In this document: positions 4,182 to 55,145 of the stretch, one piece after another
How the letters are laid out: the number at the start of each line of letters is the position of its first letter
How positions within the stretch are numbered: position 1 is the first letter of the stretch
NCBI GenBank assembly: GCA_002269645.1
Contig: NIVC01002200.1
Span: 124,001-188,000, forward strand
DNA from: Macrostomum lignano
Lineage: Eukaryota
Reading direction: 5' to 3'
DNA: 64,000 bases
Translations under genes and position numbers: made by a program
Notes under the pieces: generated by a model
The model's input: the letters and a program-made list of their open reading frames with translations, nothing else
Told to the model about the DNA's origin: nothing
Databases searched by the model: none

Positions 4182-4249
4182 GCATGAAGTGGAGATTTGC
4201 CCATTTTGTATCTACTACTAATAGTAGTTTGTGTATTTCTCTTCTGTAT

Positions 4250-7659: not shown

Positions 7660-8830
7660 TATCTAGCTAGCTAACTAATTAGCTATCCAGGAAACTAATC
7701 AGCTATCCAGGTAACTAATCAGCTATCCAGGTAACTAATCAGCTATCCAGGTAACTAATCAGCTATCCAGGTAACTAATCACCTATCCAGGTAACTAATC
7801 AGCTGCTATCCAGGTAACTAATTAGCTATCCAGGAAACTAATCAGCTATCCAGGTAACTAATCAGCTATCCAGGTAACTAATCAGCTATCCAGGTAACTA
7901 ATCAGCTGCTATCCAGGTAACTAATTAGCTATCCAGGAAACTAATCAGCTATCCAGGTAACTAATTAGCTATCCAGGTAACTAATCAGCTATCCAGGTAA
8001 CTAATCAGCTATCCAGGTAACTAATTAGCTATCCAGGTAACTAATCAGCTATCCAGGTAACTAATCAGCTATCCAGGTGACTAATCAGCTATCCAGGTAA
8101 CTAATTAGCTATCCAGGTAACTAATCAGCTATCCAGGTAACTAATCAGCTATCCAGGTAACTAATCAGCTATCCAGGTAACTAATCAGCTATCCAGGTGA
8201 CTAATCAGCTATCCAGGTAACTAATCAGCTATCCAGGTAACTAATTAGCTATCCAGGTAACTAATCAGCTATCCAGGTGACTAATCAGCTATCCAGGTAA
8301 CTAATCAGCTGCTATCCAGGTAACTAATTAGCTATCCAGGAAACTAATCAGCTATCCAGGTAACTAATTAGCTATCCAGGTAACTAATCAGCTATCCAGG
8401 TAACTAATTAGCTATCCAGGTAACTAATCAGCTATCCAGGTAACTAATTAGCTATCCAGGTAACTAATCAGCTATCCAGGTAACTAATCAGCTATCCAGG
8501 TAACTAATCAGCTATCCAGGTAACTAATCAGCTATCCAGGTAACTAATCAGCTATCCAGGTAACTAATCAGCTATCCAGGTAACTAATCAGCTATCCAGG
8601 TAACTAATCAGCTATCCAGGTAACTAATCAGCTATCCAGGTAACTAATCAGCTATCCAGGAAACTAATCAGCTATCCAGGTAACTAATCAGCTATCCAGG
8701 TAACTAATCAGCTATCCAGGTAACTAATTAGCTATCCAGGTAACTAATTAGCTATCCAGGTAACTAATCAGCCTCCCAGGTAACTAATGAGCCCTCCAGA
8801 TAACTAATTAGACATCTAGGGAACTAATCA
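7660..8830. repeat. 20-bp minisatellite (TAACTAATCAGCTATCCAGG)
   Basis: Tandem periodicity of 20 nt with occasional 23-nt units. Begins about 45 nt after the stop codon of the 8876-12183 gene. Confidence 0.96.
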
Positions 8831-8875
8831 GCAATGTCACTACAATCAAACTTACTCCAATCCATGTCAGTATTC

Positions 8876-12234: not shown

Positions 12235-13130
12235 TTACATAATTCCTGTCCTGTCCGATCTCCACCTAAGGCATGACTGTATTAAAATAAATTCCTGTCC
12301 AATCCCCACCTAAGGCGTGACCATATTAAAATAAATTCCTGTCCAATCCCCACCTAAGGCGTGACCATATTAAAATAAACTCCTGTCCAATCCCCACCTA
12401 AAGTGGGACTGCATTTACCTAATTCCTGTCCGATATCTACCTAAAGTGGGACTGTATTTACCTAATTCCTGTCCGATATCTACCTAAAGTGGGACTGTAT
12501 TTACCTAATTCCTGTCCGATATCTACCTAAAGTGGGACTGTATTTACCTAATTCCTGTCCGATATCTACCTAAAGTGGGACTGTATTTACCTAATTCCTG
12601 TCCGATATCTACCTAAAGTGGGACTGTATTTACCTAATTCCTGTCCGATATCTACCTAAAGTGGGACTGTATTTACCTAATTCCTGTCCGATATCTACCT
12701 AAAGTGGGACTGCATTTACCTAATTCCTGTCCGATATCTACCTAAAGTGGGACTGTATTTACCTAATTCCTGTCCGATATCTACCTAAAGTGGGACTGTA
12801 TTTACCTAATTCCTGTCCGATATCTACCTAAAGTGGGACTGTATTTACCTAATTCCTGTCCGATATCTACCTAAAGTGGGACTGTATTTACCTAATTCCT
12901 GTCCGATATCTACCTAAAGTGGGACTGTATTTACCTAATTCCTGTCCGATATCTACCTAAAGTGGGACTGTATTTACCTAATTCCTGTCCGATATCTACC
13001 TAAAGTGGGACTGTATTTACCTAATTCCTGTCCGATATCTACCTAAAGTGGGACTGTATTTACCTAATTCCTGTCCGATATCTACCTAAAGTGGGACTGT
13101 ATTTACCTCATTCCTGTCCGACCATAACCT
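12235..13130. repeat. 44-bp units followed by a homogeneous 43-bp array (TATTTACCTAATTCCTGTCCGATATCTACCTAAAGTGGGACTG)
   Basis: Period 44 at about 12235-12410, then period 43 for about 16 near-identical units. Confidence 0.95.
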
Positions 13131-13624
13131 AAAGTCAACGTTGACGTTCAACTATATGCTTGTAATCAAAAACCACGTGGACAATATTTAACACACTATG
13201 CAGATATCTAAATGAAATAAATCAAGCCAAACAGAATTTACCTGCAAAAATGTAAAAAATCGTTGGAAAATTAGCAACCAAAAAACTGTATACTGCGTTT
13301 GCGCAGCGACTATTCAGCAGCGAATTGCGAAGTAAACGTGTACAAAAGCCTGTCACAAGTATATGTACATGGGTGAATACAATTCAGTTAAATCTAGACA
13401 TACGAATATACGCTAACAAGGTCTCATACCATTATAAATACTTTATATACAAAATCTAAAAACAATTGAAAACAAAATCAACTAATTTAAGCTGCAAGGT
13501 AATAAGTACCAAAGTTTTTTAAGTCTCCGAACCAATTCGGACTATGAGCAAGGCATAAAAGGTGCTTACGAGTACAATATAGAAAGAATTCGCCTATGTT
13601 GAGGCAACAGATAAAGGCTAGATC

Positions 13625-15002
13625 ATCGGTGATAGGGAGCGGATAAGGAACAGATATTGATACAGGGAGCGGATACTGATGCAGGGAGCGGATACTGATG
13701 CAGGGAGCGGATACTGATGCAGGGAGCGGATACTGATACAGGGAGCGGATACTGATACAGGGAGCGGATACTGATACAGGGAGCGGATATTGAGGTAAGG
13801 AACGGATACTGATGCAGGGAGCGGATACTGATACAGGGAGCGGATACTGATACAGGGAGCGGATATTGAGGTAAGGAACGGATACTGATGCAGGGAGCGG
13901 ATACTGATGCAGGGAGCGGATACTGATGCAGGGAGCGGATACTGATACAGGGAGCGGATACTGATACAGGGAGCGGATGTACTGATACAGGGAGCGGATA
14001 TTGAGGTAAGGAACGGATACTGATGCAGGGGGCGGATACTGATGCAGGGAGCGGATAATGATGCAGGGAGCGGATACTGATACAGGGAGCGGATAATGAT
14101 GCAGGGAGCGGATACTGATGCAGGGAGCGGATAATGATGCAAGGAGCGGATACTGATACAGGGAGCGGATATTGAGGTAAGGAACGGATACTGATGCAGG
14201 GGGCGGATACTGATGCAGGGAGTGGATACTGATACAGGGAGCGGATACTGATACAGGGAGCGGATATTGAGGTAAGGAACGGATACTGATGCAGGGAGCG
14301 GATACTGATACAGGGAGCGGATACTGATACAGGGAGCGGATGTACTGATACAGGGAGCGGATACTGATACAGGGAGCGGATATTGAGGTAAGGAACGGAT
14401 ACTGATGCAGGGAGCGGATACTGATACAGGGAGCAGATACTGATACAGGGAGCGGATACTGATACAGGGAGCGGATGTACTGATACAGGGAGCGGATACT
14501 GATACAGGGAGCGGATATTGAGGTAAGGAACGGATACTGATGCAGGGAGCGGATACTGATACAGGGAGCGGATACTGATACAGGGAGCGGATACTGATAC
14601 AGGGAGCGGATACTGATACAGGGAGCGGATGTACTGATACAGGGAGCGGATACTGATACAGGGAGCGGATATTGAGGTAAGGAACGGATACTGATGCAGG
14701 GAGCGGATACTGATGCAGGGAGCGGATACTGATACAGGGAGCAGATACTGATACAGGGAGCGGATACTGATACAGGGAGCGGATGTACTGATACAGGGAG
14801 CGGATACTGATACAGGGAGCGGATATTGAGGTAAGGAACGGATACTGATGCAGGGAGCGGATACTGATACAGGGAGCGGATGTTGAGGTAAGGAACGGAT
14901 ACTGATACAGGGAGCGGATACTGATGCAGGGAGCGGATACTGATGCAGGGAGCGGATACTGATGCAGGGAGCGGATACTGATGCAGGGAGCGGATACTGA
15001 GG
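13625..15002. repeat. 19-bp minisatellite (GATACTGATACAGGGAGCG) with GATATTGAGGTAAGGAACG variant units
   Basis: Tandem periodicity of 19 nt. Lies between the two paralogues. Confidence 0.96.
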
Positions 15003-15990: not shown

Positions 15991-18375
15991 TTATTCCATC
16001 GCAGCGTCTAAACGACTTAAACAGCTTATCAGATTCTGCATGGTAACAATTTCGGCTCTCCGACGCATCGCCAATTCGTTGCGACGGCCAGCTGGCCAGC
16101 CGATGAGGAGCGGGCAAAACCGGGAACATCCAACTGTTGACGTGGTTTCAGACAGGCAAACCGTCTGTCCAGGAAAGCGGAACGAGTCGATGTCGGGCCG
16201 CTTGAACAGGCCCGGCTGAAGGCTGTTCCCGAGCTCCAGCAGCCCGTCAAAGATGAGGTCGCAGTCGCGGTACACGAAGAACAGCGGCCGGCGGGTGCCC
16301 AAGCAGTGCTGCAGCAGGGACCTGGCGTGGCTGCCTTCACGGCGCAGCTCCTCGAACAGCGGCTCGTCCAGCACAAATAGGAAAATGGTTTGATGAAGCT
16401 GCTGCTCCAGTAGCTGCTGCGGGCCGATATTTACTGGATACGAATCCAAGTGCCTTAACCTTACTGGGATTTGATCCCTAGCCGTACTCTTACAATATCC
16501 ATTCCATAATCCACATTCCCAGAATCAATCCCCAATCTCAATTCCAAAATCATGAATCCAGACTTCTTCTGCAATCCCTGTTTAAAGAATCCCCATTTCC
16601 AATTCCAAACATCCCCAATCCAAATGTCCAGCAGGTCTCACCGACATCACCCAATCAGAGTAGCAAAATCCATCATCTGCAGCGAAGGTCCAGTCAGTCT
16701 CAAAGCAGACATCGTAGGGAATGAGCTCCACGCTGGCGGGCTCCGCACAGGCAATGCATTTGCCAAACTGCGGGTCCAAGTCCGCCAAACTGACGGCTCC
16801 GCTAGCGCAGATGCGCACAGCGGCGCGGCGAAGCGTCAGGCCAGCCGGCTGCGCTGGCGGCGGCGCGAAGTTCGACGGATTTGCATCTTCGAGCAGCTCG
16901 AACAGAATGACGGCCGCCAGTTCCAGACGATTTCTGTCGATCAATCCGACAAGAAAGCCGCGAACTTGGTTGCCAGCCTGCCTGCTGATGTGCTGCACCA
17001 GCTGGTCCTGACATGTGACATGGTTATTACAAGTTATTAGCAGGGGAGCGGTGAACTTGTAAGTAGCTTGAACGCAGTGCCGCACTCTCTCACAGCAGTG
17101 CAGCACTCTCACACAGCAGCAGTGCAGCACTCTCTCACAGCAGTGCAGCACTTTATAACAGCAGCAGTGCAGCACTTTATAACAGCAGCAGTGCAGCACA
17201 CTCTCACAGCAGCAGTGCAGCACTTTATCACAGCAGTGCAGCACTTGATCGCAGCAGCAGTGCAGCAATCTCTCACAGCAGTGCAGCAATCTCTCACAGC
17301 AGTGCAGCACTTTATCACAGCAGCAGTGCAGCACTCTCTCACAGCAGTGCAGCACTTTATCACAGCAGCAGTGCAGCACTCTCTCACAGCAGTGCAGCAC
17401 CCTCTCTCACAGCAGCAGTGCAGCACTCTCTCACAGCAGCAGTGCAGCACTCTCTCACAGCAGTGCAGCACTCTCTCACAGCAGCAGTGCAGCACTCTCT
17501 CACAGCAGCAGTGCAGCACTTTATAACAGCAGCAGTGCAGCACTCTCTCACAGCAGCAGTGCAGCACTCTCTCACAGCAGTGCAGCACTTTATAACAGCA
17601 GCAGTGCAGCACTCTCTCACAGCAGCAGTGCAGCACTCGCACACAGCAGCAGTGCAGCACTCGCACACAGCAGCATATCACACATGACACCATAGCACAT
17701 CATAGCACTCACCACGCTCATGCCCATTATGGTCTGAAAGTCCAGGTTCTGAACCAAGCCAATATTGACTACAAAATCGTGACCCAACACCGGGTTCTGA
17801 AGCCGAGCCAGGTACAACTTGAATAGAGATTCTCCTCTGCTACTGATGTCGCCCAGAGGAGACTGCAGTCGCCGTGCCAGCTGCACAGACTTGGCCTCTG
17901 CCAGGTGTACAAGACCGGCAAGAGACCCAGACCCGAAGCTGCGCAGGTGGTCGCAGCGCCGCAGGAAGTCAGCAAACCGAATCAGCTTGCTTGAACGATC
18001 TGCAAGATTCTCCTCCCAGAGGTGCAGCAGTTTCAGCAGGCAGCACCGCAGCTCTGCAAAGTCCTCTGGCTGCAGCTGGTACAGCTGCTGAACTGTCACC
18101 AGCTGGTCCATCAGTTTAACTAACAGCACTTCGCCTCTAAGGCTCATCGCTTCATTGGATGTCAGGTTAACAAGACGGAGTATGTCTCTAGTGGATTCAC
18201 TGTGGACAATGCTGTGCAGCGCACTCAGTAGGTCAGTCAGAATCAGCTTTGATGCTTCTGGTAAGTAGCCAAATAAGGCGAGTGGCAGTGAGCCATGCCT
18301 GTCTAAGACCTCATCATCTCTATTGTTGTTGAGTGGCTGCTCCATGTCTGACATTGCATCAATGTAGAATGCCAT
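15991..18375 (-). CDS. Uncharacterised ~484-aa protein, possible death-fold + TIR-like architecture, copy 2; exons 18375-17713, 17007-16642, 16416-15991
   Basis: Paralogue of 8876-12183 with the same intron phases. Exon 1 is nearly identical; the ends of exons 2 and 3 are divergent but open. Confidence 0.65.
17075..17672. repeat. 21/24-bp CAG-rich minisatellite in intron 1 of copy 2
   Basis: Same unit as 10215-11482, about half the length. Confidence 0.95.
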
Positions 18376-21617: not shown

Positions 21618-23428
21618 CTTGACTTACTTGACTTAGCTGCAGGGGGGCTCTGCGCGTCCGGAAACAGTGAGGAGGCGTTGCCACCCATTTTGCTAACCCC
21701 TGGCGACCACGGGCAGCTAGTGCTGCAGTGTCACATAGGGAGTTCTGGTGGTGCTGGTGTCCGCAATACGGTCCCCCTCCGGAGAGTCCAGGAGCTGGAT
21801 GTTCGCTCGCCCAGTAGCCCTTAGGTAGCGGACGAGCTGGCAGAGATTCTCGGGCCTGAAAACGTTGGAGAGGTCCAGGTTTGGGCCAAGGTAGGTAAGC
21901 CTGTCCTGAGTAAAGGCGGGGCATTCACAGATGAAGTGCTCCGCATTCTTGATACCAGAGAGGCAGAAAGGGCATTCCTCACTGCAGATTTTCTCCTGGA
22001 GGTAACGATGCCAGGCAAAGCAGCAATGACCTGAAAGGGCCATGGTCACCACCCTGATGTCCCTGCAGTTAAGTCCAAGCAGGGCCCTGCAGGGCGGAGG
22101 AGGGACAGGGGATAGCCGCGTGGGATTGCCGGCAGTCGGGGGCGTTGGCCCACCTCTCCCTGTGCTTAGAAGCCACCCACTGGTTGATCCGAGTGGTGAC
22201 AACGGCGATGGGGGTGGGGGCCACAGGCAGGGGACCAGTGAAAGAACCAGTCGAGCCAGCCTTGGCCAGGCGATTGGCCAGCTCGTTGCCAGGGTGGCCC
22301 GAATGCCTGGGGATCCACCTTAGGGACACCTTGTTGGAGGCGCCTAAGCGGTTGAGCTGCCCAATGCAGTCAAGGACTGTATGCGAGCAGGTGGTGGTGC
22401 GCTCAAGGGCGTGAATTGCCGCTTGACTGTCCAAGTGGAGGGTAATTTCCTTCCCCCAGACGTGCTGATTGTACAGCTCCATGGCGCAGGAGCTGATGGC
22501 GAGAACTACGTTCTGGAAGACGGTGGAGCAGGTGCCAGTGTGTTGGGAGAAGGTCGCCACAGTTCTCTCTCCAGACACGATGCAGTAGCTGTATCCAGAG
22601 GCGGAGTTGATTTGGGACCCATCAGGGAAGCAGTGGATTTCATAAGGTTTCCAGTTGTCTCTCGCTTCATGGCGTGGTGGAATGCTGGTTTTGAATTTGA
22701 GCGGGGGGCAGAGCGTGGACGGGATTCCGTCTGAGAGGGTCAGCAGGCCTCTCGCTGCTTCCAGGTCTTGCAGGCTGAGGTCGCCATGTGGCCAGAGGTT
22801 CTGCTTTCTGAAGGCAAACTGCTTCTGGATTTGGACACCCGCGTCAAGCAGATGACGGGTGGTTTTCATTGCCTCCCCTCTAATAAAGAGGTCGAGGGGG
22901 GGAATGTCCAAGAAGGAGTTCATGCCAGCGAAGGGCGTAGAGGGAGCCGCGCTCATGATAGCTCGACAAGCGCGGCCTTGCACCCTATTTAAAACCTCAA
23001 GAACCCCTTTCACCTCTAGGGCACTGTTCCAAATGAAGCCGGCAAAGGAGATGGCCGGTCTAACAATGGCAGTGTGAATCAACCAGAGGCGGCGGGGGGT
23101 GAGGCCCCAGGTAGCACCGAAAGCTCTGCGGATCTGCGCGAGAGTCGCGAGAGCTTTGCGGGCTTTTGTTTGGACGTGTGGGGTCCAGCTCAACCTGTGG
23201 TCGAGGGTGACGCCCAGACATCTAGTTTGTTTCTCCATGGCAACAGGTTTGCCATAGAGGGAGAGCGGTTCGATCCTCCAGTTTCGGCGGCTAGTGAACA
23301 TGATAGCCACAGTTTTAGACTCAGAGAACCTGAGGCCGCAGCTATGTGCCCAGCGATCGGCACAGTGAATGAAGGCTTGAAGGAGGTCCCTGAGGACCGC
23401 AGGCGATGGTCCAGCCACAGTGGTGGTA
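21618..23428 (-). mobile_element. 5'-truncated I-group (I/Loa/R1-like) LINE: RT C-terminus, RNase H, CCHC knuckle
   Basis: GLRFSESKT and [14 protein letters not shown] (RT); [29 protein letters not shown] (RNase H); CPFC-x8-HFICEC. Frameshift near 22100. (TAAGTCAAG)2 tail at 21618-21635. Confidence 0.88.
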
Positions 23429-24161
23429 CACTGTAATTTTAAAAGGTCCGAAAAAGGGTCCGACGAGGGTCCGCAGTTAGGGTCCGGACCGTCGCTATAT
23501 AGGGACCCATAGGGGTCCGGTTTTTCAAGGAGGTCCATAATTAGGGGTCCGAAAAAAGGTCCACGATGGTCCGTTCTTAGGGATCCATTTTAGGGTCCGC
23601 AGCGTCGCTATATATGGACCCTCAAAAGAGGGGTCCGAAAAAAGGTCCACGATGGTCCGTTCTTAAGGGTCCATTTTAGGGTCCGCAGCATTGCTATAAA
23701 CGGACCCTCAAAAGAGGGGTCCAAAAAATGGTCCACTTTTTCAGGTCGCTCACGCTCCTTTTTATTATACAGAAAGAGCCCGCCAAAAGGAAAAAATGAA
23801 AAAGGCGAATACTATTTCCCAAAAACGAGTTGTAGGAGGCAGCAATCTGTAGGCTTTGCTAATCAGGTATTGGCAATTGCAAAGATAATGATGTTTGCAA
23901 TTCTTATATTATATTACTAATTTTGTACTATGCATAATGTATTGCCACAATGGCAAAAACCATTAGAATAGGTGTTCTATAATTCAACACAACACCTAAT
24001 TCAAAATTGTGTCACTTACACGCAACATACAAATAGGAAGGGAAAGTGAAAAATACGGCAAGCTTTAAGAACAGGTAGCATCTGCAAGACGTGAAAGTGG
24101 AGAAGACGACACACAATACACAAATAGGAAGGGAAAGTGGAAAATCAGTTGTAAATGTCAG

Positions 24162-25784
24162 TTAGCCAAGTGCATCGAGAAGAGTTTTTGCAGGGCGCCG
24201 CGAAACAGCGCTGCACTTCCAGAGCTTCGACAGAACCTCAATGGCTTCCAGAAATGATTCAATGCACGGGATATGCTGCAGATTGAAAGCCACAAAGCAC
24301 GCGGTGAAGCAGACAATGATGTCTCCAGGGGAGTCAAAAAGCAGCTCGGCTCCATTGATAGAGACACCGCACCAGACATCACCCTCACCCTGCTGAATGA
24401 TGTGGATGGGCAGCTCAGGCAAAAAAATGACTGATGGATTGCAGCCAGTGCGGCCAAGAAGAAGGCAAAATGCTGCAGCAATCTTCTTCTCATCGTCATC
24501 AGTGTCCACCAGGAAAGGCTGGCACATCTTGTAGTTTTTCATTGTGATTCTCTTTGGCCAGACACGCTGAAGAAGTGCTGTGCGGATGTTCTTGCCGATG
24601 TCGCTTGGCGACTCTGGCAGAATGTAGTCCGTTTTGGTGTTGCTTCTGTACGTGTCAATCATGAGGTAGGCCTCCTGCAGGATGACCGGGCAGAGGACGA
24701 GTGGCTTGTACAGGTTCACCTGCTCCTTGATGGTTAGTTCCTGGCAACGCAAAATTCTGACAGCGAAGAGATCCTTCATGGCTTCAAGGACGTCGTTGAT
24801 CTGCATTAGGTTGAAGCTCTGGTTGAGGGACTTCCAGGCCTCCTCATGCCTTGGTGGAACCTCGTCGATCTCACAGGAGCCCAGGTAGACGCTCTTAGCA
24901 ATACTGCAAGCATCTGACTGGTCCAGTAGGAGGCGCTTCTCTTTAGGCTCTTTGACTGGGTCAACGTCTTCTTCAGAATCACCGCCGTCATCTGCCACCA
25001 CCGCTGCTTCAATATTGGCATGCTTCTCTGCAGCGTCCAAGGGTACACGCTTGCATCTGAACTTCTCCCGGCTGTTTAAAACCATGGGACTGCTGCATTG
25101 GGGCAGGATCTTACTGCGCAGCTCTTTCAGTCGACGAGTAATCTTGACCCGCCAGAACTGACAGCCATCTGGTGAAGTGTCGCTGAGGCCCGGGTAAGTC
25201 AAAATAATTGCATTGCAAACGTCCCGTATCTCACCAGCGGATAGGTATGGGTTGCTCATTGACTTGTAGTTCCGGAAGATGTCATTTATCGTGTACTTCA
25301 GAAACGTATTCACAAACGTCGCTTTCATCTTAAAATCTTCGCCACGTTTCGGATTGCGACGCAGATCTTGCAGCGCCTCATCCAAGTCTAGCATCCGCGG
25401 CAGCCGGTAAAGAAGTGGCCATGGCTTACTTCCTTCAGCAGAAGCTGCACTTGTCGAGGCTGCTGCAGTCTGATCGTCAGGCGCTGTGTCGCCGGCAGTC
25501 TCGCTTCCTGAAGCGTCATTACTCGGCAGCGTAGCCACATTGCTAGCTGCTGGTGCTGGAGGTGCCCAAGCCTCCCCTTGATGCAGGAAGATAAGCTCGG
25601 TCTTGCTAGCTGCCAGGTCAGGCAGGAAGTCGTCATCATCCACCACAAAGCCATCTGCCGTGACAACCTGAATCTCGCAGGTAGTCTCCAGCTCCAGTTT
25701 TGCACATCCCTGCTCAAGAAGCTGGTTGAATGAGGACGGCTTGACTAGCCTCTTCCGTGAACCATCACGATTGGTGATTCGCAG
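24162..25784 (-). CDS. Transposon ORF2: N-terminal CIDE-N-like domain plus the helical domain typical of animal EnSpm accessory ('SAMD3-like') proteins
   Basis: The open frame extends from the acceptor TTTCAG|CTG at 25784 in frame with ORF 24162-25646. Motifs YPGLSD..G..FWRVKITRRLKELR and CF..F.AFNLQH..C...LEAIE. The start exon was not found. Confidence 0.75.
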   Translation of the reverse strand: MRITNRDGSRKRLVKPSSFNQLLEQGCAKLELETTCEIQVVTADGFVVDDDDFLPDLAASKTELIFLHQGEAWAPPAPAASNVATLPSNDASGSETAGDTAPDDQTAAASTSAASAEGSKPWPLLYRLPRMLDLDEALQDLRRNPKRGEDFKMKATFVNTFLKYTINDIFRNYKSMSNPYLSAGEIRDVCNAIILTYPGLSDTSPDGCQFWRVKITRRLKELRSKILPQCSSPMVLNSREKFRCKRVPLDAAEKHANIEAAVVADDGGDSEEDVDPVKEPKEKRLLLDQSDACSIAKSVYLGSCEIDEVPPRHEEAWKSLNQSFNLMQINDVLEAMKDLFAVRILRCQELTIKEQVNLYKPLVLCPVILQEAYLMIDTYRSNTKTDYILPESPSDIGKNIRTALLQRVWPKRITMKNYKMCQPFLVDTDDDEKKIAAAFCLLLGRTGCNPSVIFLPELPIHIIQQGEGDVWCGVSINGAELLFDSPGDIIVCFTACFVAFNLQHIPCIESFLEAIEVLSKLWKCSAVSRRPAKTLLDALG

Positions 25785-25905
25785 CTGAAATTAGAATTTG
25801 ACATATGAAGATGATTAAATCTAATAGGTAACACAGGCAAAACAGACATTGTGCTCATCTATTTCATCATCTCAAATGAATGTCAAATTCTAATTCCAGT
25901 ATACA

Positions 25906-26514
25906 CTACATGGAGAATAACAGTGAGATACAAATCTTCCTTGTTCCTTGAGATATGTTGAGATATGATATGTTCCTTGAGATATGAAATGTTCCTTGAG
26001 ATAATATCGGCACAGCATATCGATTGCTTGTAGTTGCAGTCTTATAATGAAAACCTTTATATGTGAGACTATTAGTAGAAAAGCAAAAATGGCCTATATC
26101 ACTTCTTTTGATTTCAAATTTTTCACATAATTTAATTTGATCTGGAAGAAATAAAATAGAATTAAGTTGAACAGCTGTTGAATGAGAACAATTATAATTA
26201 ATTGGCACAAGGTGCTTAATTGTTAGAGCTTTTTGAACTTGGAGCTTTTTTGCACATGTGTATGAGACATTAATATAATTCTTAGATTTTCTACTACTTT
26301 CTTTTACTACCCGATGATGGGCTTCACTTCTCATTGACCAAAGATAATATAAACCATTATAAAAAGAAAATAAAGAAGGATAATGGCATATATAATGCAA
26401 TTTGCATTTATATTTTGGATTACCCTTTGCAAGCTTATATATAAGTTCTATTTGTGCTGCAACTAAAAACTTTAAATAGTCTATACTAATTGTTTGGCTA
26501 CAAGATATTGGTGC
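25906..26514 (-). pseudogene. EnSpm/CACTA transposase C-terminal fragment
   Basis: IDYLKFLVAAQIEL...KCKLHYICHYPSL....LYYLWSMRSEAHHRVVK..KNYINVSYTCAKKLQ matches the K.H...HYP...W.MRFEAKH motif. Truncated 5' by the RTE. Confidence 0.8.
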
Positions 26515-28067
26515 AAAAAAAAAATAATAATAATAATAGTTACGCCCCACGCCAGCCACGGGAGTGGCCAAGAGGGGGGGAGCGTCAAATCGCGCGTTTC
26601 AGAGCCAGGTCTCTAATGTGCTTCACACCGGCCGTCTGGCTGGGTGCTCGCGCATCTTCAAAAAGGCGGTCGACGTAGCGGGCTGATCGTCCCTGACCAC
26701 GCCTGCGCGGTCCCTGCGGGGTCCACAGCAGGACGTCCTGCAGCGGCTCTGGGCAGTAGGCTTCGGCCCGGATGACATGTCCGGCAAGCCGCAGGCGCCG
26801 CTGACTCAGCAGGGCAGAAGGCCGCGTCAGGCCTGTGCGTTTGTACAGGGACTCGGTTGTCTCGCTGCCAGGGCCGCGGCGGGCGCCGAAAGCGGCGCGG
26901 ACTAGGGCCGCATGCGCCGCGTCGAGCTGCGCCTCAAGCGCCCCGGTCAGCGTCCAGGTCTCAGCATTGTACAGCAGGGCGGTCTCAACAACCGCCTGGA
27001 ACAGCTGGGACCTGGCGCCGTCGGACAGGGCCTCGGAGAGCAGCACCGCCCGCACAGATCGGAAGGCAGCCCAGGCCTTGCCGCGCCGTCTCGCTAGGTC
27101 GTCACCGACGTCCGGCACCAGTCCGCCGAGGTAGACGAACTGAAGGCACTTCGGGAGCGCCGTCCCGGGGCCGTCGCCGTCTCGAAGTCGAATCTCGGCG
27201 GGTAGATCATGCGGCATCGTCAGCACCTCGGTCTTCCTGGCGTTGATGACGAGACCGACCCTCGCCGCCGCCGCAGTCAGGCCGTCCAGCAGCCGTTGGG
27301 CGCCTTCGGCCGTGGAAGACAGCAGGGCGAGGTCGTCCGCGTAGCCAAGGACAGACAGTTTCTTCTCCGGGTGCCATCTACTGGTGCGCCTTTGCAGCAG
27401 AAAGCCGTCCTCTGATGTCGGCAGGCCGGTCCTGAGCACCCAGTCCATCACCAGCACGAAGAGAAAGGGCGCCAGAGTGTCACCCTGTAGCACTCCGGAG
27501 GTCGTGCTAAACAGGTCCGACGGTCCGTCTGGCGTCGCTACCGCGGCGGTGGTGTCCTGATACAGCGCCATGATGGCGGAGATCAGCTGCTGCGGTACGT
27601 TGTAGGCACGGAGCACGTGAGGCAGCGCGCCGCGCGCCACCGAGTCGAAGGCCTTGAGGAAGTCAACAAAGATGACGATAAGGCTTGACTGGTGGATGCG
27701 CGCCTCCTCGATGATGCGGCGGAGGGCCAGGATCTGCGTCACCGTACCGCGATGGGGGCGGAACCCGTTCTGCTCGTACCGCAGGAACGAGTCCAGCACG
27801 GGCTGTAACCGTGCTAATAGCACCCGGTTGAACAGCTTCGCGGTACAGGACGTGAGCGAGATTCCACGATGCTCCTCCTTCCGTGTAGTGCCCGGCTTCT
27901 TCGGGATGCCGACGATGTTGGCCTGGGTCCACTCGCGGGGCGCGGGGCCTCCCGCCAGGACGCCGTTCATCACGCGGGCCACCTCAGTGGCAACCCTTGT
28001 GACTCGCAGCGCCTCGACGGGGACCTCGTCCGGGCCGGGCACTTCATTCTGGCACTTCCAACCTTGT
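26515..28067 (-). mobile_element. 5'-truncated RTE-clade non-LTR retrotransposon with an uninterrupted RT
   Basis: PGPDE, RGISL, QNGFRPHR, FVDFLKAFDSV, GVLQGDTLAPFLF, GYADDLALL, RRLRLAGHVIR. Short 3' UTR with a (TTA)n+T tail. High GC. 5' junction approximate. Confidence 0.92.
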
Positions 28068-30283
28068 GCAGTTGATTGCACCAATCCACTTGCGGCAATT
28101 GATTGAAGTGCGCTAAAAAATGCAATGACTTCTGGCTTTTTGTTAAATCTGTTGTGTCCATAAACCAGGCTGAACAAGTTCTGTATAAATTATGAAACGA
28201 AGCATGAAACAAGTTTTATTCAGTTTTGATTTCTGAATAATTTAAGTTATTCAGCTACAATTACAAATACTATATGACTGTACAATTCAAAATGTTTAAA
28301 TTTAATGATTGACTTTTGCAATAGATTTATTTGCAATGATTCTATGTAGTTCTATTGTTTATTGTCTATTATTAATATTTGTAAAACATAAATTTAGTAA
28401 AATGCTGGACTTACAAAGTCATACCATGAAGAAGTTTGAAAAGCTTATAAAAATACTCACCTCCACATGATCCTGAGTCAGTCTTCTAGTACAGACATAG
28501 TCAAAGCTATCCATAAGGATTAGAGATTCTGCCAGTTTTGAGATTGATGCAATTGAAGTCAGCCACAGGCCTTGAATTTTGTAGTCATTTTTGCAGCACG
28601 ACAGCCTAAAGGGTGAAATATCCGGCTCTTGACAAACTTGCTAAACTGCTGTAGGCTTGCTAGTTGGTCATAGAATTTTTCCTTAGAGATGGGCTGCTTA
28701 TATTCCTTGCCAAATACATGAATGGAGTTTAACATGCCGGATACACTGTCAACCTCATCAGCAAACTCGGCTGTCTGTAGAGCTTACTTAGGCATCTCTT
28801 GATGATGAACAAGAATTTTAATCCCACTGGCATTCGAGTGGCTTAAAACTTGAGCAGCCAACAAGACTTTCATCTTCTAGGCCATTTGCAAATTGAAATG
28901 GGTGTCATCTAACTTGTTTGCCAATTTCAGATGAAGACTGCTGTCTATATTATAGAAGCAGACAATGTGTTGCCACTGAGCCACCTTACAACCATCAAAT
29001 TCGATATTGTTTTTGATGAGAGCGTTTCTCAAACTTTTTAGTCAATGGGGCACATCAATGAAAACATAAGCTGCTTCCTTTGTAATTGGATGGCACAGGA
29101 ATGGTCTTTCTGGACTGTTTTGATAAGTATGCCCACTGTGTTGTTTCCTGATCTGCAAAAATAGTGACAACTCGAATTCCTGCATTATGACTGGCTGTCA
29201 AGCACTCGTTAATGGCGTTTTCAAATCCTTCCTGACACTGGGGATCTGTAAACCGGATAATAAGCAATAGTTTGTCTCCAGTCTCGTCTAACACCTTGCA
29301 GTACACCAACTACAGCTTCGTTCACAACTGGAGGAAAACACTTGCCACTGCCTCTGGTCTGCTTAGATGCAGGGTCAAAGCAAACAATCTCGTCGCAATG
29401 CTGGTCATATCGAATTGAATATTGATGAAGACAGACTTCAGAAGACAGACAGATGCGTTCATGGTCAGGTGCTGTAGTATTTTCTCAGACAAGGAGCGCA
29501 TGGTCATGCTGCATACACCAGTAGTGCTGAAGAACAGCCGAGTCCGCCTCTTGATCAAAGATTCCGACGGAATCGTCAAATTCCAGTTGCTTCTTAGCAA
29601 TCAATAAGCAGCTGGACTCTTGTGCCGCAGTTGTATCGCCGATGATATGTCTCGGTTGGACCATCGCATGCCATGATAGTGTCTGGGCTCGTGCTAGATG
29701 AAGCTGAAGCTTATTTATCGTCGCTTGATGGTTGCAGAGTTGCTTTTGCAGCTTTTTTACTTGACTGGATTGGAGCGAAAATCGCAGTTGCAGCGCTCGA
29801 TCTCTGTTGATGCATGTAGCTGTCACATCAGGTGCCCGCTTCGAAGTGCCTGGAGCAGCTGCAGTGTCCTCCTCAGCATCCCACCTTGTTAGAACAGGCG
29901 GATATAGTTTGTCAGCGTCTGCATCAGTCCTTGTTATCTCCAGCTCGCTTTCAAGCTTTAGCCGGGGCAGTACTAGCAGCTTGTTTGGTACTGCACTGCA
30001 TTCCATAGCAATCGAGTAGATGCCTCATGCCGAAATGTGGGGCAGCTGTAATCTGAATCGTCGAAATGTGCACTGCAGACTTTCAACTCGCGCTTTCGAA
30101 TCGCTGTAAGCTCTAAATCCAGCTCCAGAATTCCTTTCCATCGAGTAGCCACCGCGTCATCTGCAGGGAATCTGTACATTCGCACTGGAGTTCCAATATC
30201 ACAAGTGTATGCTTGTGTTGTGTTTGTGCAAGTGGCTGCACAAACACACTTTTTGAGCTAAATGTAGAAGTTTGCGTGGCCAT
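28068..30283 (-). pseudogene. THAP9/P-element-like transposase with frameshifts, a stop, and an intron at 28460-28181
   Basis: THAP: CAATCTN..MYRFPAD..W..VCSAHF. Core: W(R)QTIAYY, KMKVLLAAQVLSHS (preceded by TAG), TAEFADEVD, TRRLTQDHVE|NLFS across a phase-0 GT-AG intron. Confidence 0.85.
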
Positions 30284-34864: not shown

Positions 34865-36947
34865 TTACAGCCACCATTCCTGACCACGGACAGCCGGCAG
34901 GCCGCCCTCGGCGTGCTGCAACGCCACGTCGGGATCGTCGGTGAGGTCGGCGGCTTTAGCCTCGTTAGTCCAGTAGTCGCCGCGCTCGAATGTGTAGTTG
35001 CGGAAGAAGCAGATCACTCCAATCAGCAATAGGAGAGCCAGGGCGCCAACCACGGCTAGGATTATTATTATCTGGTTCTGCCGCTCGATGTCCTCGGGTC
35101 GGGCGAATTCCAAATTCGGCGGAATAGTCGGATACGGCCTGCGGACAGTCGGTTAAGAGTGCAGGCTATGAGGGTAGAAATCTGACTGTGATAGTAGAGA
35201 TCCGACTGTGATAGTAGAGATCCGACTGTGATAGTAGAGATCTGACTGTGATAGTAGAGATCCGACTGTGATAGTAGAGATCTGACTGTGATAGTAGAGA
35301 TCTGACTGTGAGGGTAGAGATCTGACTGTGATAGTAGAGATCTGACTGTGATAGTAGAGATCTGACTGTGATAGTAGAGATCTGACTGTGATAGTAGAGA
35401 TCCGACTGTGATAGTAGAGATCTGACTGTGATAGTAGAGATCCGACTGTGATAGTAGAGATCTGACTGTGATAGTAGAGATCTGACTGTGATAGTAGAGA
35501 TCCGACTGTGATAGTAGAGGAGATCCGACTGTGATAGTAGAGATCCGACTGTAATAGTAGAGATCTGACTGTGATAGTAGAGATCCGACTGTGATAGTAG
35601 AGATCTGACTGTGATAGTAGAGATCTGACTGTGAGGGTAGAGATCCGACTGTGATAGTAGAGATCTGACTGTGATAGTAGAGATCTGACTGTGATAGTAG
35701 AGATCCGACTGTGATAGTAGAGATCTGACTGTGATAGTAGAGATCCGACTGTGATAGTAGAGATCTGACTGTGATAGTAGAGATCTGACTGTGATAGTAG
35801 AGATCTGACTGTGATAGTAGAGATCTGACTGTGATAGTAGAGATCTGACTGTGATAGTAGAGATCTGACTGTGATAGTAGAGATCTGACTGTGATAGTAG
35901 AGATCTGACTGTGATAGTAGAGATCCGACTGTGATAGTAGAGATCTGACTGTGATAGTAGAGATCCGACTGTGATAGTAGAGGAGATCCGACTGTGATAG
36001 TAGAGATCCGACTGTAATAGTAGAGATCTGACTGTGATAGTAGAGATCCGACTGTGATAGTAGAGATCTGACTGTGATAGTAGAGATCTGACTGTGATAG
36101 TAGAGATCTGACTGTAAGGGAGAGATCTGACTGTAAGGGAGAGATCTGACTGTGGGGGTAGAGATCTGACTCTGTAAGGGAGAGATCTGACTGTGAGGGT
36201 AGAGAGACCTCACTCTGTGAGGGTAAAGATCTCACTATGCGAGGGTAAAGATCTCACTCTCTGACTGTAGAGATCTGACTTTAAGAATAGAGATCTCACT
36301 ATGGGAACAGAGATGATTATGAGAATAACAGATCTCACTATGGGGATAGAGAACAGAAGTCAATCAAAGAGAAAAATTATAAGAATAAATACTTCGAAGT
36401 ATCAAATAACTTTTCAACTTTGGAGACCTATGGGAATACATATGGGAAGACTTATTGGAATACTTTTAGACGAAAACCTAGATCAAGAACAGAGATCAGA
36501 AACTATCATGATACCAGGTTACGAAAAAACTCACCGAATCTCGGCCGGGTCGTCAATCGGCAGGACCTCTTCGATACCGCAGTAGTTCTCCGTAATGCCC
36601 GACGACTTAAATACCCGGCTATTGTTGGGCTCCTGGAAGGCGGCTTTCAATGGGAAGAAATTATTAAACTGCACGTTGTAGATGCAGCCCTCGAATCCAA
36701 CAGGCATGCTGGAGTTGCGCCCGATGTAGATCACGGCCGGATTGTCCAGCCGGGTGTCCGACGTGGCGCTCAATATGTTGGAGAAGTCCCTGAACTGCAC
36801 CGGATAGTCGTCCACTTTGATGTTCACCTGCGCGTGGCGCCAGAGGCGGTTTCATCTATGTACCCATCTATCTATCTGTCTTGGTGTCCGTCTGTCCATC
36901 CATCTATCTTAGTGTCCGTTCGTCTGTCTGTCTGTCTGTCTGTATCG

Positions 36948-55135: not shown

Positions 55136-55145
55136 GCAATATCCA

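What the first reader, a model, noticed from the sequence alone, without database searches (positions are those of the whole stretch)
24162..25784. CACTA/EnSpm transposon carries an accessory protein with an N-terminal CIDE-N domain
Seen: the frame upstream of the listed ORF start translates as LRITNRDGSRKRLVKPSSFNQLLEQGCAKLELETTCEIQVVTADGFVVDDDDFLPDLAASKTELIFLHQGEAWAP. Established: CIDE-N (CAD/DFF40, ICAD/DFF45, CIDE, Drosophila Drep) has the pattern RK.V.ASSL.EL..K....L....L....DGT.VDDE.YF..L...T.L..L..GE.W, which this follows closely. It is the homotypic module controlling the apoptotic DNase and forms oligomers. Here it is fused to a typical EnSpm ORF2 body, and the ORF is intact over about 540 codons although the transposase is truncated. 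Inference: a transposon-captured apoptosis-pathway interaction domain, used for oligomerisation or to interfere with host CAD/ICAD. I do not know of this being described.
Basis: partly seen in the sequence, partly recalled or inferred. Interest (0 to 1): 0.85.

Follow-up and report, generated by a model that had tools for sequence, protein, structure and literature searches.

The report
CIDE-N accessory protein of flatworm CACTA transposon
A cut-and-paste (CACTA/EnSpm-type) transposon of the flatworm Macrostomum carries a second gene whose protein starts with a genuine CIDE-N domain, the module that normally controls the apoptotic DNase; the copy in this window is a decaying relic, but intact copies exist elsewhere and the domain is conserved, most likely as a self-assembly module for transposition.

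Summary
The minus-strand frame 24162-25784 translates as stated. Its first 73 residues match Pfam CIDE-N (E=1.4e-12, 47.9 bits; threshold 23.5), and the model superposes best on solved CIDE domains, not on ubiquitin or PB1.

It lies in a 5'-truncated, LINE-interrupted copy of a ~6.7-kb Macrostomum lignano element. Intact copies have CACTG...CAGTG ends, 2-bp target duplications and GGACC subterminal arrays. They carry a C2H2 zinc-finger CACTA-type transposase gene followed by this ORF2.

At least four diverged M. lignano subfamilies and two unidentified organisms keep transposase followed by CIDE-N ORF2. Synonymous sites are saturated while the CIDE-N domain stays conserved.

The ORF2 body also follows related transposases in fish and unidentified organisms. 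There the N-terminus is a different, weakly PB1-like or SAM-like module. This favours oligomerisation over interference with host CAD/ICAD.

The start codon is probably donated by the AUG-ending spliced leader, because a conserved YTNCAG acceptor abuts the first CIDE-N codon.

The window copy is neutral debris: dN/dS is 0.83, and 24 of 44 differences are one-directional CpG decay.

I found no published description. I rate it a new variant of a known kind, of moderate to high interest.

The parts
24162..25784 (-). ORF2 reading frame of the transposon: 540 codons plus stop. It encodes the CIDE-N accessory protein.
   Evidence: Translation. It is 96% identical to M. lignano BOX15_Mlig029757g2. 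Intact homologues are L001/L002 9998-11617.
25566..25781 (-). CIDE-N domain (residues 2-73).
   Evidence: Pfam PF02017 E=1.4e-12, 47.9 bits against a cut-off of 23.5. PDB sequence hits are CIDE domains only. The AF2 model superposes on DREP2 CIDE 4d2k with TM 0.79 and rmsd 1.5 A.
25785..25790 (-). TTTCAG, a putative (trans-)splice acceptor abutting the first CIDE-N codon. There is an in-frame TAA two codons upstream and no ATG.
   Evidence: The same YTNCAG|L/F-R-I junction occurs in L004, L011 and L003. The M. lignano trans-splice acceptor motif is [T/C]TNCAG and the SL ends in ATG (PMC8629364). L001/L002 have ATG here instead.
25434..25559 (-). Low-complexity Ala/Ser/Pro linker (residues 76-117).
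   Evidence: pLDDT below 50. Not conserved between subfamilies: pN 0.45-0.60.
25056..25427 (-). Helical domain of the ORF2 body (residues 120-243). It contains the invariant WP..Y.LP motif and a basic GRKR-type stretch that is mutated to RCKR in this copy.
   Evidence: pLDDT about 80-90. Invariant W122, P123, Y180, L200, G207, W211 and R223 across 13 homologues, fish included.
24903..25055 (-). Acidic disordered linker (residues 244-294).
   Evidence: pLDDT below 50. Variable in length and sequence.
24165..24887 (-). C-terminal alpha/beta domain of the ORF2 body (residues 300-540). Fold not matched to anything solved.
   Evidence: pLDDT about 85-96. No PDB or BFVD structural match to this part. 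Conserved in fish and other homologues.
23429..24161 (-). 3' untranslated and subterminal region of the element. It ends in the terminal inverted repeat ...AATTACAGTG at 23429-23438. GGACC-type subterminal repeats span 23429-23735.
   Evidence: GGACC occurs 22 times in the intact element against 2.7 expected, 19 of them in the last ~310 bp. An 86-bp tandem unit is seen at 23543-23764.
23427..23428 (-). TA flanking dinucleotide, one half of the 2-bp target-site duplication.
   Evidence: Complete copies carry matching 2-bp duplications: TG/TG (L001, L002), TA/TA (L004, L011) and CA/CA (L005).
25788..25937 (-). Intergenic region upstream of ORF2, homologous to L001 9846-9997.
25938..25987 (-). 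About 50 bp of filler marking an internal deletion of about 1.46 kb. The missing segment held the transposase C-terminus and the 132-bp tandem repeats of the intact element.
   Evidence: blastn against L001: 8386 to 9846 is missing. The tandem repeats are at L001 8957-9748.
25988..26525 (-). Remnant of the ORF1 transposase gene (residues ~560-734 of 812).
   Evidence: tblastn: 96% identity over 175 aa. blastn: 97.8%.
26585..28177 (-). Reverse-transcriptase ORF of a non-LTR retroelement that interrupts or truncates the transposase. The rest of the CACTA element (5' TIR and ORF1 residues 1-560) is absent from the window.
   Evidence: Pfam RVT_1 4.8e-32. No further ORF1 or element matches in the window.
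22069..23426 (-). Retroelement fragment (RNase H) that abuts the 3' end of the CACTA element. The listed ORF 22069-23538 runs by chance into the GGACC repeats.
   Evidence: Pfam RNase_H 4.1e-7. Sequence.

Best explanation
The window holds a dead, 5'-truncated copy of a ~6.7-kb CACTA/EnSpm-superfamily DNA transposon of Macrostomum lignano or a very close relative.

Intact elements are TG|CACTGTAA...TTACAGTG|TG units with arrays of GGACC subterminal repeats and two genes. ORF1 is a C2H2 zinc-finger DDE transposase. ORF2 is a ~540-aa accessory protein built as CIDE-N, disordered linker, helical domain with a basic NLS-like stretch, acidic linker, then an alpha/beta C-terminal domain.

Shown: the CIDE-N domain is genuine, it is an integral selected part of ORF2 in several long-diverged subfamilies, and the ORF2 body is the conserved partner of this transposase clade in other animals.

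Inferred: the CIDE-N domain serves as a head-to-tail, charge-driven self-assembly module. It keeps the DDDD acidic patch and an N-terminal R/K cluster. This would let ORF2 polymerise, probably on or next to the subterminal repeat arrays, to build or regulate the transposition complex, as maize TnpA does by other means. It would not act by plugging into the host apoptotic DNase pathway.

Also inferred: ORF2 is expressed from a (possibly polycistronic) element transcript by spliced-leader trans-splicing, with the leader's terminal AUG supplying the start codon in frame (AUG|CUG CGA = M-L-R-I).

The copy in the window is decaying neutrally and is probably not functional.
For: CIDE-N: Pfam 47.9 bits against a cut-off of 23.5. 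PDB sequence hits are CIDE only. The AF2 model (mean pLDDT 74) matches DREP2 and FSP27 CIDE domains best, at TM 0.76-0.80 and rmsd 1.5-2.0 A, against about 0.6 and 3-4 A for ubiquitin-likes.

Transposon: L001 and L002 share a 6,694-bp unit at 99.97% identity in different flanks. The termini are CACTG...CAGTG with 2-bp TSDs of TG, TG, TA, CA and TA in five complete copies. GGACC occurs 22 times against 2.7 expected, clustered at the ends. ORF1 relatives hit Transposase_21 (5e-5), Plavaka (26.5 bits against a cut-off of 26.3) and DUF4218.

Linkage and selection: the order transposase then CIDE-N ORF2 holds in L001/2, L004, L005, L010 and L011. There are at least 22 annotated ORF2 loci in four M. 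lignano subfamilies. Between subfamilies pS is 0.66-0.94 (saturated), while pN is 0.25-0.46 in CIDE-N and 0.45-0.60 in the linker.

Body as the conserved partner: ORF2-body homologues lie just downstream of related transposases in L012, in the cichlid locus L013, and as exons in L006, L008 and L009.

Module swapping: the fish N-termini are PB1-like (E=6.8e-4 and 5.6e-4, sub-threshold). L006 is SAM-like (E=6.4e-3). There is no profile-profile homology to the CIDE-N set (30% probability).

Charged patches: the DDDD stretch aligns with the ICAD acidic patch DDDD. CIDE domains polymerise head-to-tail through basic and acidic patches (PMC6292858).

SL start: the YTNCAG|L/F-R-I junction is conserved in the window, L004, L011 and L003. 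There is no upstream in-frame ATG in the window, L004, L005 or L003. The SL sequence ends ...TTGCATG and the acceptor motif is [T/C]TNCAG (PMC8629364). NCBI models P0001 and P0018 begin exactly at that Leu and are flagged partial.

Dead copy: dN/dS is 0.83, which excludes omega=0.2 at p=6e-4. 24 of 44 substitutions are CpG to TpG/CpA in the window lineage and none go the other way. Derived changes hit conserved positions (R317W, R522W, GR to RC in the basic motif).
Against: Nothing shows directly that ORF2 oligomerises, binds DNA or is needed for transposition.

The body has no recognisable DNA-binding fold. The transposase's own zinc fingers could read the repeats.

The PB1-like and SAM-like assignments of the other N-termini are below curated thresholds, and L009's N-terminal exon has no Pfam hit.

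In this subfamily one helix position that is basic in the other subfamilies (K/R-G-C) reads E-Q-G-C, so the basic patch is weaker.

ORF1 itself gives no Pfam hit at E<=1. Its CACTA assignment rests on relatives and on the termini.

SL trans-splicing is inferred from sequence and annotation, not from reads. L001/L002 carry a genomic ATG, L010 has its own ATG, and L011 has in-frame ATGs upstream.

Tick and other relatives were only shown to have weak or exonic ORF2 matches.
Confidence: 0.6

Rival explanations
1. Host-pathway interference. ORF2 uses its CIDE-N domain for heterotypic binding to host DFF40/CAD or DFF45/ICAD-like proteins. It might act as an ICAD mimic that damps apoptotic DNA fragmentation when transposition makes double-strand breaks, or it might recruit a nuclease.
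For: CIDE-N/CIDE-N heterodimers are the normal way CAD is controlled (PMC6292858). The element's domain keeps the ICAD-like acidic DDDD patch. ICAD is among the best PDB matches of the family profile (3.3e-6).
Against: The same ORF2 body is paired with non-CIDE N-terminal modules in fish and other lineages. A CAD-specific role therefore cannot be the family's core function. Whether Macrostomum has CAD/ICAD at all was not tested here. There is no caspase-site or DFF-C-like region in ORF2.
Confidence: 0.12
2. ORF2 is a transcriptional or epigenetic regulator of the element, in the TnpA-like sense of promoter control or a self-limiting repressor. The CIDE-N domain only raises avidity, and the protein takes no direct part in the cut-and-paste chemistry.
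For: Maize TnpA both represses and reactivates the Spm promoter (background in PMC1636069). ORF2 has a basic NLS-like motif and an acidic, activation-domain-like linker. Repeat arrays sit both at the ends and between ORF1 and ORF2.
Against: No DNA-binding domain is recognisable. This is not distinguishable from the best explanation with sequence data alone, and it overlaps with it on oligomerisation.
Confidence: 0.18
3. The N-terminal domain is not a captured CIDE-N. It is a divergent descendant of an ancestral beta-grasp domain of the ORF2 family, the same one seen as PB1-like in fish, that merely converged on CIDE-like sequence.
For: All ORF2 homologues have a ~70-residue N-terminal module in the same position followed by a low-complexity linker. 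P0025 (L012) has a very weak CIDE-N score (E=0.18), hinting at a gradient.
Against: The flatworm domains pass Pfam's curated CIDE-N threshold by a wide margin, and the model superposes at 1.5 A with 32% identity on DREP2. hhalign finds no significant relation between the CIDE-N set and the fish-type set (30% probability over 33 columns).
Confidence: 0.07
4. The copy in this window is itself a functional, possibly domesticated, gene.
For: The 540-codon frame is open and retains the family-typical acceptor TTTCAG.
Against: dN/dS is 0.83. 24 of 44 differences are one-directional CpG decay. There are derived substitutions at conserved sites and a 2-codon insertion. The promoter-bearing 5' half of the element is missing and retroelements flank it. 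At about 2% divergence an open frame is expected by chance.
Confidence: 0.03

Closest known systems
Maize En/Spm (CACTA) with TnpD transposase and TnpA accessory protein
   Same: Both have CAC-starting terminal inverted repeats, short target duplications and arrays of short subterminal repeats at both ends. Both encode a transposase plus a second element-encoded protein from one unit by RNA processing. The accessory protein is thought to self-associate on the repeats.
   Different: ORF2 has no sequence similarity to TnpA and gives no Pfam Transposase_24 hit. The TSD is 2 bp, not 3 bp. The TIR is CACTG, not CACTA. Expression is probably by SL trans-splicing rather than alternative cis-splicing. 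The self-association module is a CIDE-N domain.
Animal CACTA/'TRC' elements such as Schistosoma mansoni SmTRC1 (PMC1636069)
   Same: Both are from a flatworm host. Both have a Transposase_21-type transposase, a 2-bp TSD, tandem repeats downstream of the transposase ORF and additional downstream coding capacity from processed transcripts.
   Different: SmTRC1 has 54-bp CCC-starting TIRs and no reported CIDE-N protein. The Macrostomum element has CACTG ends, GGACC subterminal arrays, an N-terminal C2H2 zinc-finger transposase and a defined 540-aa ORF2.
CIDE-N proteins of the apoptotic DNase and lipid-droplet systems (DFF40/CAD, DFF45/ICAD, CIDE-A/B/C, Drosophila DREP1-4)
   Same: The domain family is the same by Pfam threshold. 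The predicted alpha/beta-roll fold is the same, as are the acidic EDG..DDDD patch and the N-terminal basic residues used for head-to-tail contacts (PMC6292858).
   Different: The architecture is new. There is no nuclease, DFF-C or CIDE-C region. The domain is fused to a transposon accessory body, sits inside TIRs, is multi-copy and is linked to a transposase.
Fungal CACTA-like elements (Plavaka, KDZ) that carry accessory genes such as TET/JBP
   Same: These are CACTA-superfamily transposases with a conserved passenger or accessory gene. One relative of ORF1 passes the Plavaka threshold.
   Different: The accessory gene is different, with no dioxygenase. The host is an animal. The accessory protein here looks structural or regulatory rather than enzymatic.

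Membership tests
CIDE-N domain (Pfam PF02017) | Profile match above the curated gathering threshold over the whole domain | tested here: met
   47.9 bits against 23.5, E=1.4e-12, profile positions 5-75 of 76. Also met in L001 ORF2, P0017, P0019 and P0024.
CIDE-N domain (Pfam PF02017) | Alpha/beta-roll (beta-grasp-like) fold closer to solved CIDE domains than to ubiquitin or PB1 | tested here: met
   The AF2 model superposes on DREP2 4d2k at TM 0.79-0.80, rmsd 1.5 A and 32% identity, and on FSP27 4ikg at TM 0.76. Ubiquitin-likes give TM about 0.6 and rmsd 3-4 A. This is a prediction, not an experimental structure.
CIDE-N domain (Pfam PF02017) | Oppositely charged surface patches used for CIDE-CIDE contacts | tested here: met
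   D44 and D49-D52 align with the ICAD EDG..DDDD patch. The R/K cluster at residues 10-15 is conserved in all subfamilies. One helix position that is basic in other subfamilies is E-Q in this one.
CIDE-N domain (Pfam PF02017) | Homotypic binding or filament formation | not testable with these tools
   Needs SEC-MALS or EM of the recombinant domain.
DFF/CIDE protein families (CAD, ICAD, CIDE-A/B/C) | CIDE-N followed by a CAD nuclease, DFF-C or CIDE-C region | tested here: not met
   There is no other Pfam domain in ORF2. The body has no PDB sequence or fold match. ORF2 is therefore not a member of these protein families and only shares the domain.
CACTA/EnSpm (CMC) DNA transposons | Transposase of the Transposase_21/TnpD type | tested here: inconclusive
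   ORF1 itself gives no Pfam hit at E<=1. Its homologues (E down to 1e-48) hit Transposase_21 at 4.5e-5 to 5e-5, which is below the cut-off. One passes Plavaka at 26.5 bits against 26.3, and DUF4218 is hit weakly, all in colinear positions.
CACTA/EnSpm (CMC) DNA transposons | Terminal inverted repeats beginning CAC(TA/TG) | tested here: met
   The ends are 5'-CACTGTAA(A/T)T...A(A/T)TTACAGTG-3' in L001, L002, L004 and L011, and CACTGTGAAT...GCAGTG in L005. The 3' end is present in the window.
CACTA/EnSpm (CMC) DNA transposons | Short (2-3 bp) target-site duplication | tested here: met
   Matching 2-bp flanks TG/TG, TG/TG, TA/TA, CA/CA and TA/TA in five complete copies.
CACTA/EnSpm (CMC) DNA transposons | Arrays of subterminal repeats | tested here: met
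   GGACC/GGTCC occurs 22+7 times against about 2.7 expected per strand motif, clustered in the first 60 bp and the last 310 bp. Also seen in L004, L005 and L011.
CACTA/EnSpm (CMC) DNA transposons | Mobility, shown by recent identical copies at different loci | tested here: met
   L001 and L002 are 99.97% identical over 6,694 bp with unrelated flanks and neighbouring genes.
TnpA-like accessory proteins (Pfam Transposase_24) | Sequence homology to plant TnpA | tested here: not met
   No Pfam hit other than CIDE-N. The analogy is functional only.

The most novel reading that the evidence does not exclude
ORF2 belongs to a widespread, undescribed family of accessory proteins of metazoan CACTA transposons. 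The conserved body would be combined with interchangeable head-to-tail polymerisation modules in different lineages: CIDE-N in macrostomid flatworms, PB1-like in fish, SAM-like in others. CIDE-N would then be a modular polymeriser recruited by selfish DNA.

The family may have been domesticated in vertebrates. The body resembles, from my memory only and untested, the non-SAM region of SAMD3-like proteins. Fish copies are already annotated as ordinary genes.

In Macrostomum the element would also exploit spliced-leader trans-splicing to obtain its start codon.
Probability: 0.3. Interest if true: 0.8.

Novelty: new variant of a known kind. Interest (0 to 1): 0.62.

Why it matters
CIDE-N has so far been known only from the apoptotic DNase regulators and the lipid-droplet CIDE proteins. 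Finding it as a conserved, selected part of a transposon accessory protein adds a third context. It supports the view of CIDE-N as a general charge-driven polymerisation module.

It also defines, for the first time as far as I can find, the second gene of an animal CACTA clade that reaches from flatworms to fish. It gives a testable model for how these elements assemble or regulate their transposition complex.

Macrostomum lignano is a transgenic, regeneration-competent model with recently active copies (99.97% identical). The element could therefore be tested directly, and might be usable as a tool.

The probable use of an SL-donated AUG by a transposon gene is an unusual expression strategy worth confirming. 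The one-directional CpG decay of the dead copy bears on whether this flatworm methylates its transposons.

Tried and rejected
- AlphaFold with only three sequences gave an unusable model (pLDDT 36). A 13-sequence alignment was needed.
- The third word-indexed homologue search, run with the family alignment, returned only the two hits already known. Low-complexity words probably swamped the candidate list.
- Foldseek against PDB and BFVD gave no match for the ORF2 body. All listed hits were to the N-terminal beta-grasp or were noise. Only 50 of 234 PDB rows are shown and all have E>0.1, so a weak body match cannot be excluded.
- The family profile against PDB sequences found only CIDE domains.
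- I first read the missing ATG in the window as a lost start codon, because L001 has ATG there. I rejected this after seeing that diverged subfamilies share the CAG acceptor at that exact position and lack upstream ATGs. The ATG of L001/L002 is the derived state.
- I tested whether the fish-type N-terminal domains are just divergent CIDE-N. hhalign probability was 30% and a PDB profile search found nothing. No homology is demonstrable.
- dN/dS between subfamilies could not be computed because synonymous sites are saturated. I used pN against pS and the linker as an internal control instead.
- Literature searches for CIDE-N with transposon or transposase, and for Macrostomum with CACTA, found no description. 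A SAMD3-transposon link was not found either and remains an untested recollection.
- The long UniProt 'CIDE-N domain-containing' M. lignano entries are chimeric gene models fusing the element with DAXX, ribosomal L20 or WASH genes, and are not informative.
- The source organisms of Logan runs ERR11523656 and SRR26493805 could not be identified. JGI 3300040801 is a brackish microbial-mat co-assembly.
Full report
**1. The observation**

On the minus strand, window 24162-25784 is an open frame of 540 codons.

hmmscan against Pfam gives CIDE-N (PF02017) for residues 2-73, covering profile positions 5-75 of 76. E is 1.4e-12 and the score 47.9 bits for the segment alone, against a gathering threshold of 23.5. 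No PB1 or ubiquitin family appears; the next hits have E about 0.2.

phmmer against all PDB chains returns only CIDE domains: CIDE-A 2eel at 8.7e-6, then DREP2, ICAD, CAD, DREP4 and CIDE-B.

A profile built from nine transposon-borne copies of the domain returns CIDE proteins as its top eleven PDB hits.

An AlphaFold2 model made with a 13-sequence alignment has mean pLDDT 74 and 72-85 in this domain. It superposes best on the DREP2 CIDE crystal structure (TM 0.79-0.80, rmsd 1.5 A, 32% identity) and on FSP27/CIDE-C (TM 0.76). Ubiquitin, SUMO, NEDD8 and UFM1 reach only TM about 0.6 with rmsd 3-4 A.

The domain is a genuine CIDE-N.

**2. What it sits in**

The ORF is 96% identical to Macrostomum lignano BOX15_Mlig029757g2. 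That protein is encoded on two M. lignano contigs (L001, L002) with unrelated neighbouring genes. The two contigs share a 6,694-bp unit at 99.97% identity.

The unit is bounded by CACTGTAAAT...AATTACAGTG and flanked by TG on both sides in both copies.

Diverged complete copies show the same ends with other matching dinucleotides: TA/TA in L004 and L011, and CA/CA in L005. The 2-bp flank is therefore a true target-site duplication. L011 has a perfect 12-bp TIR.

GGACC occurs 22 times in the unit against 2.7 expected. Nineteen copies lie in the last ~310 bp, and three inverted copies lie in the first 60 bp. The other subfamilies have the same kind of subterminal array.

Inside the unit there are three features:
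- ORF1, 812 aa, with N-terminal C2H2 zinc fingers.
- A block of 132-bp tandem repeats.
- ORF2, 539 aa, the CIDE-N protein.

ORF1 has no Pfam hit of its own. Its homologues are two more M. lignano subfamilies, Ixodes scapularis and several unidentified eukaryotic contigs, with E down to 1e-48. They repeatedly hit Transposase_21 (tnp2; 4.5e-5 to 5e-5), Plavaka (one at 26.5 bits against a cut-off of 26.3) and DUF4218, in colinear positions.

With the CACTG termini, 2-bp TSD, subterminal repeats and two-gene layout, this is a CACTA/EnSpm (CMC) superfamily element. It is close in style to the flatworm element SmTRC1, which also has a 2-bp TSD and tandem repeats after the transposase ORF (PMC1636069).

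**3. The copy in the window**

Only window 23428-25937 and 25988-26525 match the intact element, at 97.7% identity. This covers the 3' TIR and subterminal repeats, ORF2 and its upstream 150 bp, and then residues ~560-734 of the transposase.

A 1.46-kb internal segment is deleted. It held the transposase C-terminus and the tandem repeats. A reverse-transcriptase-bearing retroelement follows at 26585-28177. The 5' half of the element is not in the window. The 3' end (...TTACAGTG|TA at 23429) abuts another retroelement fragment.

Against L001, ORF2 shows 19 non-synonymous and 7 synonymous changes plus a 2-codon insertion. dN/dS is 0.83, which is compatible with neutrality and incompatible with omega=0.2 (p=6e-4).

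Several changes are derived and hit positions conserved across the family: R317W, R522W, R524C, and GR to RC in the basic GRKR motif.

Over the whole 2.5 kb, 24 of 44 substitutions are CpG in L001 to TpG/CpA in the window, and none run the other way.

This copy is therefore a decaying relic. At about 2% divergence its open frame is what chance predicts.

**4. Is the CIDE-N part of a real, selected protein?**

Yes. An exhaustive HMMER search of 1.84 billion representative proteins found only 21 hits at E<=1e-3.

The full-length CIDE-N-plus-body proteins fall into three groups:
- Four M. lignano subfamilies (Mlig029757, 032484, 011704 and 000438), with at least 22 annotated loci.
- Two contigs from a brackish microbial-mat metagenome (P0002, P0017).
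- One contig from an unidentified Logan run (P0019).

In every case where DNA was available, the CIDE-N ORF2 lies directly downstream of an ORF1-type transposase. Transposase identities to the reference are 47% in L004, 52% in L005, 51% in L011 and 29% in L010.

Between subfamilies the synonymous sites are saturated (pS 0.66-0.94). The non-synonymous difference in the CIDE-N domain is 0.25-0.46, similar to the helical body domain (0.25-0.45). The intervening linker is clearly higher, at 0.45-0.60.

The domain is thus an old, constrained component of ORF2, not a recent accident.

**5. The body and the wider family**

The model shows three ordered parts:
- CIDE-N, residues 1-75.
- A helical domain, residues 120-243, with the invariant WP..Y.LP motif and a basic K-x-G-R-K-R stretch that looks like a nuclear localisation signal.
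- An alpha/beta C-terminal domain, residues 300-540, with pLDDT about 90.

These are separated by a low-complexity linker and an acidic linker. The body has no Pfam family, no PDB sequence match and no fold match.

The body is, however, the conserved partner of this transposase clade well beyond flatworms. Distant body homologues are:
- P0025, from Logan run SRR26493805.
- P0028, from the cichlid Maylandia zebra.
- P0032 and P0053, from the anchovy.
- P0027 and P0030.

They share the invariant residues W122, P123, Y180, L200, G207, W211 and R223.

P0025 sits right after a transposase homologue. The cichlid gene sits right after a transposase remnant.

A family HMM also finds colinear ORF2 exons downstream of the transposase in L006, L008 and L009.

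So 'typical EnSpm ORF2 body' is right in the sense of a conserved accessory gene of this animal CACTA clade. It is wrong in the sense of homology to plant TnpA.

**6. What the N-terminal module is for**

In the non-flatworm relatives the same position is occupied by other ~70-residue modules:
- Two fish proteins give sub-threshold PB1 hits (E=6.8e-4 and 5.6e-4).
- L006/L008 have a conserved half-SAM-like exon (SAM_Ste50p, E=6.4e-3).
- L009 has a fish-type exon with no Pfam hit.

A profile-profile comparison of the fish-type set with the CIDE-N set is not significant (30% probability over 33 columns). These therefore look like different modules on one body.

PB1, SAM and CIDE-N are all known head-to-tail polymerisers. 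For CIDE this is documented in PMC6292858. For PB1 and SAM it is established knowledge, marked here as my own.

The element's CIDE-N keeps both charged surfaces. D44 and D49-D52 align with the ICAD acidic patch, and an R/K cluster at residues 10-15 is conserved in all subfamilies.

My best inference is that CIDE-N provides self-assembly of ORF2, probably in the nucleus and probably on or near the repeat arrays. This would parallel the way maize TnpA dimers on subterminal repeats organise the En/Spm transposition complex (background in PMC1636069). It remains an inference; no assay was possible.

Interference with host CAD/ICAD remains possible but is disfavoured by the module swapping. I could not test whether the host has such genes.

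**7. How ORF2 gets its start codon**

The window has TAA TTT CAG | CTG CGA, whereas L001 and L002 have TAA TTT ATG CTG CGA.

In diverged subfamilies the first CIDE-N codon (L/F-R-I) is immediately preceded by a pyrimidine tract and CAG: TTTCAG in L004 and L003, and TTCCAG in L011. There is no in-frame ATG between the upstream stop and that codon in the window, L004, L005 or L003.

The M. lignano spliced leader is CGGTCTCTTACTGCGAAGACTCAATTTATTGCATG. The motif at trans-splice acceptors is [T/C]TNCAG, and 21-30% of genes are trans-spliced, including in operons (PMC8629364).

Trans-splicing at this site would give ...GCAUG|CUGCGA, which reads M-L-R-I-T-N in frame.

This also explains why the NCBI models P0001 and P0018 begin exactly at that leucine and are labelled partial.

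I therefore consider it likely (about 0.65) that the spliced leader donates the AUG. ORF2 may be resolved from an ORF1-ORF2 pre-mRNA in this way. The ATG in L001/L002 would be a derived CA-to-AT change at the acceptor. Confirmation needs reads.

**8. Comparison, novelty and verdict**

The element is a member of the CACTA/EnSpm superfamily by its ends, TSD, subterminal repeats and, indirectly, its transposase.

ORF2 carries a member of the CIDE-N domain family. It is not a member of the DFF or CIDE protein families, because it has no nuclease, DFF-C or CIDE-C region.

I found no paper connecting CIDE-N with transposons. UniProt merely auto-labels chimeric M. lignano models as 'CIDE-N domain-containing'. 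A Hydra genome paper lists CIDE-N among domains over-represented together with transposase domains, without comment (PMC7642931).

I rate the finding a new variant of a known kind. Interest is about 0.6. It would be higher if the interchangeable-polymeriser family and a vertebrate domestication were shown.

Noticed in passing
window 23429-25937 versus L001 9846-12356: Of 44 substitutions between the dead window copy and the active-looking copy, 24 are CpG to TpG/CpA in the window lineage and none run in the reverse direction. CpG count is 105 against 134. This looks like methyl-cytosine deamination of a silenced transposon copy. M. lignano is reported to have low-level 5mC with DNMT1 and DNMT3 (PMC11292947).
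   Followed up: partly
L001/L002 9998-10000 versus window 25785-25787: The two 99.97%-identical, apparently youngest copies carry ATG exactly where the window and other subfamilies carry the CAG of the splice acceptor. This two-base change would replace an SL-donated start codon with a genomic one at the same position.
   Followed up: partly
L001 8957-9748 (absent from the window; deletion scar at window 25938-25987): Five to six copies of a 132-bp tandem repeat lie between the transposase gene and ORF2 in the intact element. SmTRC1 of Schistosoma has tandem repeats in the same place. Their function (promoter, outron or binding array) is unknown.
   Followed up: no
L013 8133-16584 (Maylandia zebra), and P0032/P0053 (Engraulis encrasicolus): Fish genes annotated as ordinary 'uncharacterized protein LOC...' are homologues of the ORF2 body with PB1-like N-termini. 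The cichlid one lies just downstream of a CACTA transposase remnant. From memory only, the body also resembles the non-SAM part of vertebrate SAMD3-like proteins. This is a possible domestication and was not tested.
   Followed up: partly
window 54-2423, 3131-5625, 7672-8832, 10217-11481, 12381-15000, 17074-17675, 35166-36352, 52486-56761, 62090-63972: The window is packed with minisatellite arrays of 16-45-bp period (mostly 19-45), each 0.2-2.4 kb long and 85-98% matching (17 distinct array loci in the full scan; only part are listed under 'where'). Some have strong strand asymmetry: GC skew is +0.67 at 1-2000 and -0.78 at 62001-64000. Several long 'ORFs' in the window are just translations of these arrays.
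   Followed up: no
window 43086-44600 (+): A 504-aa ORF carries a BED zinc finger and a Hermes-type transposase DNA-binding domain. It is a hAT-superfamily transposase fragment or gene.
   Followed up: no
window 29973-30185 (-), with further ORFs at 29055-30006: A THAP-domain ORF (Pfam E=1.2e-5) is followed by other short ORFs on the same strand. It may be a P-element/THAP9-like or other THAP-bearing element, broken into pieces.
   Followed up: no
window 38319-41599 (-): Exons of what looks like a host gene encode F5/8 type C, laminin G (twice) and EGF domains. This is a contactin-associated/neurexin-IV-like architecture.
   Followed up: no
P0039 (UniProt A0A1I8IIT0) and P0051 (A0A1I8HFV0): The UniProt M. 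lignano entries named 'CIDE-N domain-containing protein' (2,034 and 2,381 aa) are chimeric gene models. They fuse the transposon ORF2 with DAXX, ribosomal protein L20 or WASH-complex genes, so the database architecture for CIDE-N in this species is misleading.
   Followed up: yes
literature: PMC7642931 (Hydra viridissima genome): CIDE-N is listed among Pfam domains over-represented in two Hydra species, alongside transposase domains. Transposon-borne CIDE-N proteins might also exist in cnidarians.
   Followed up: no
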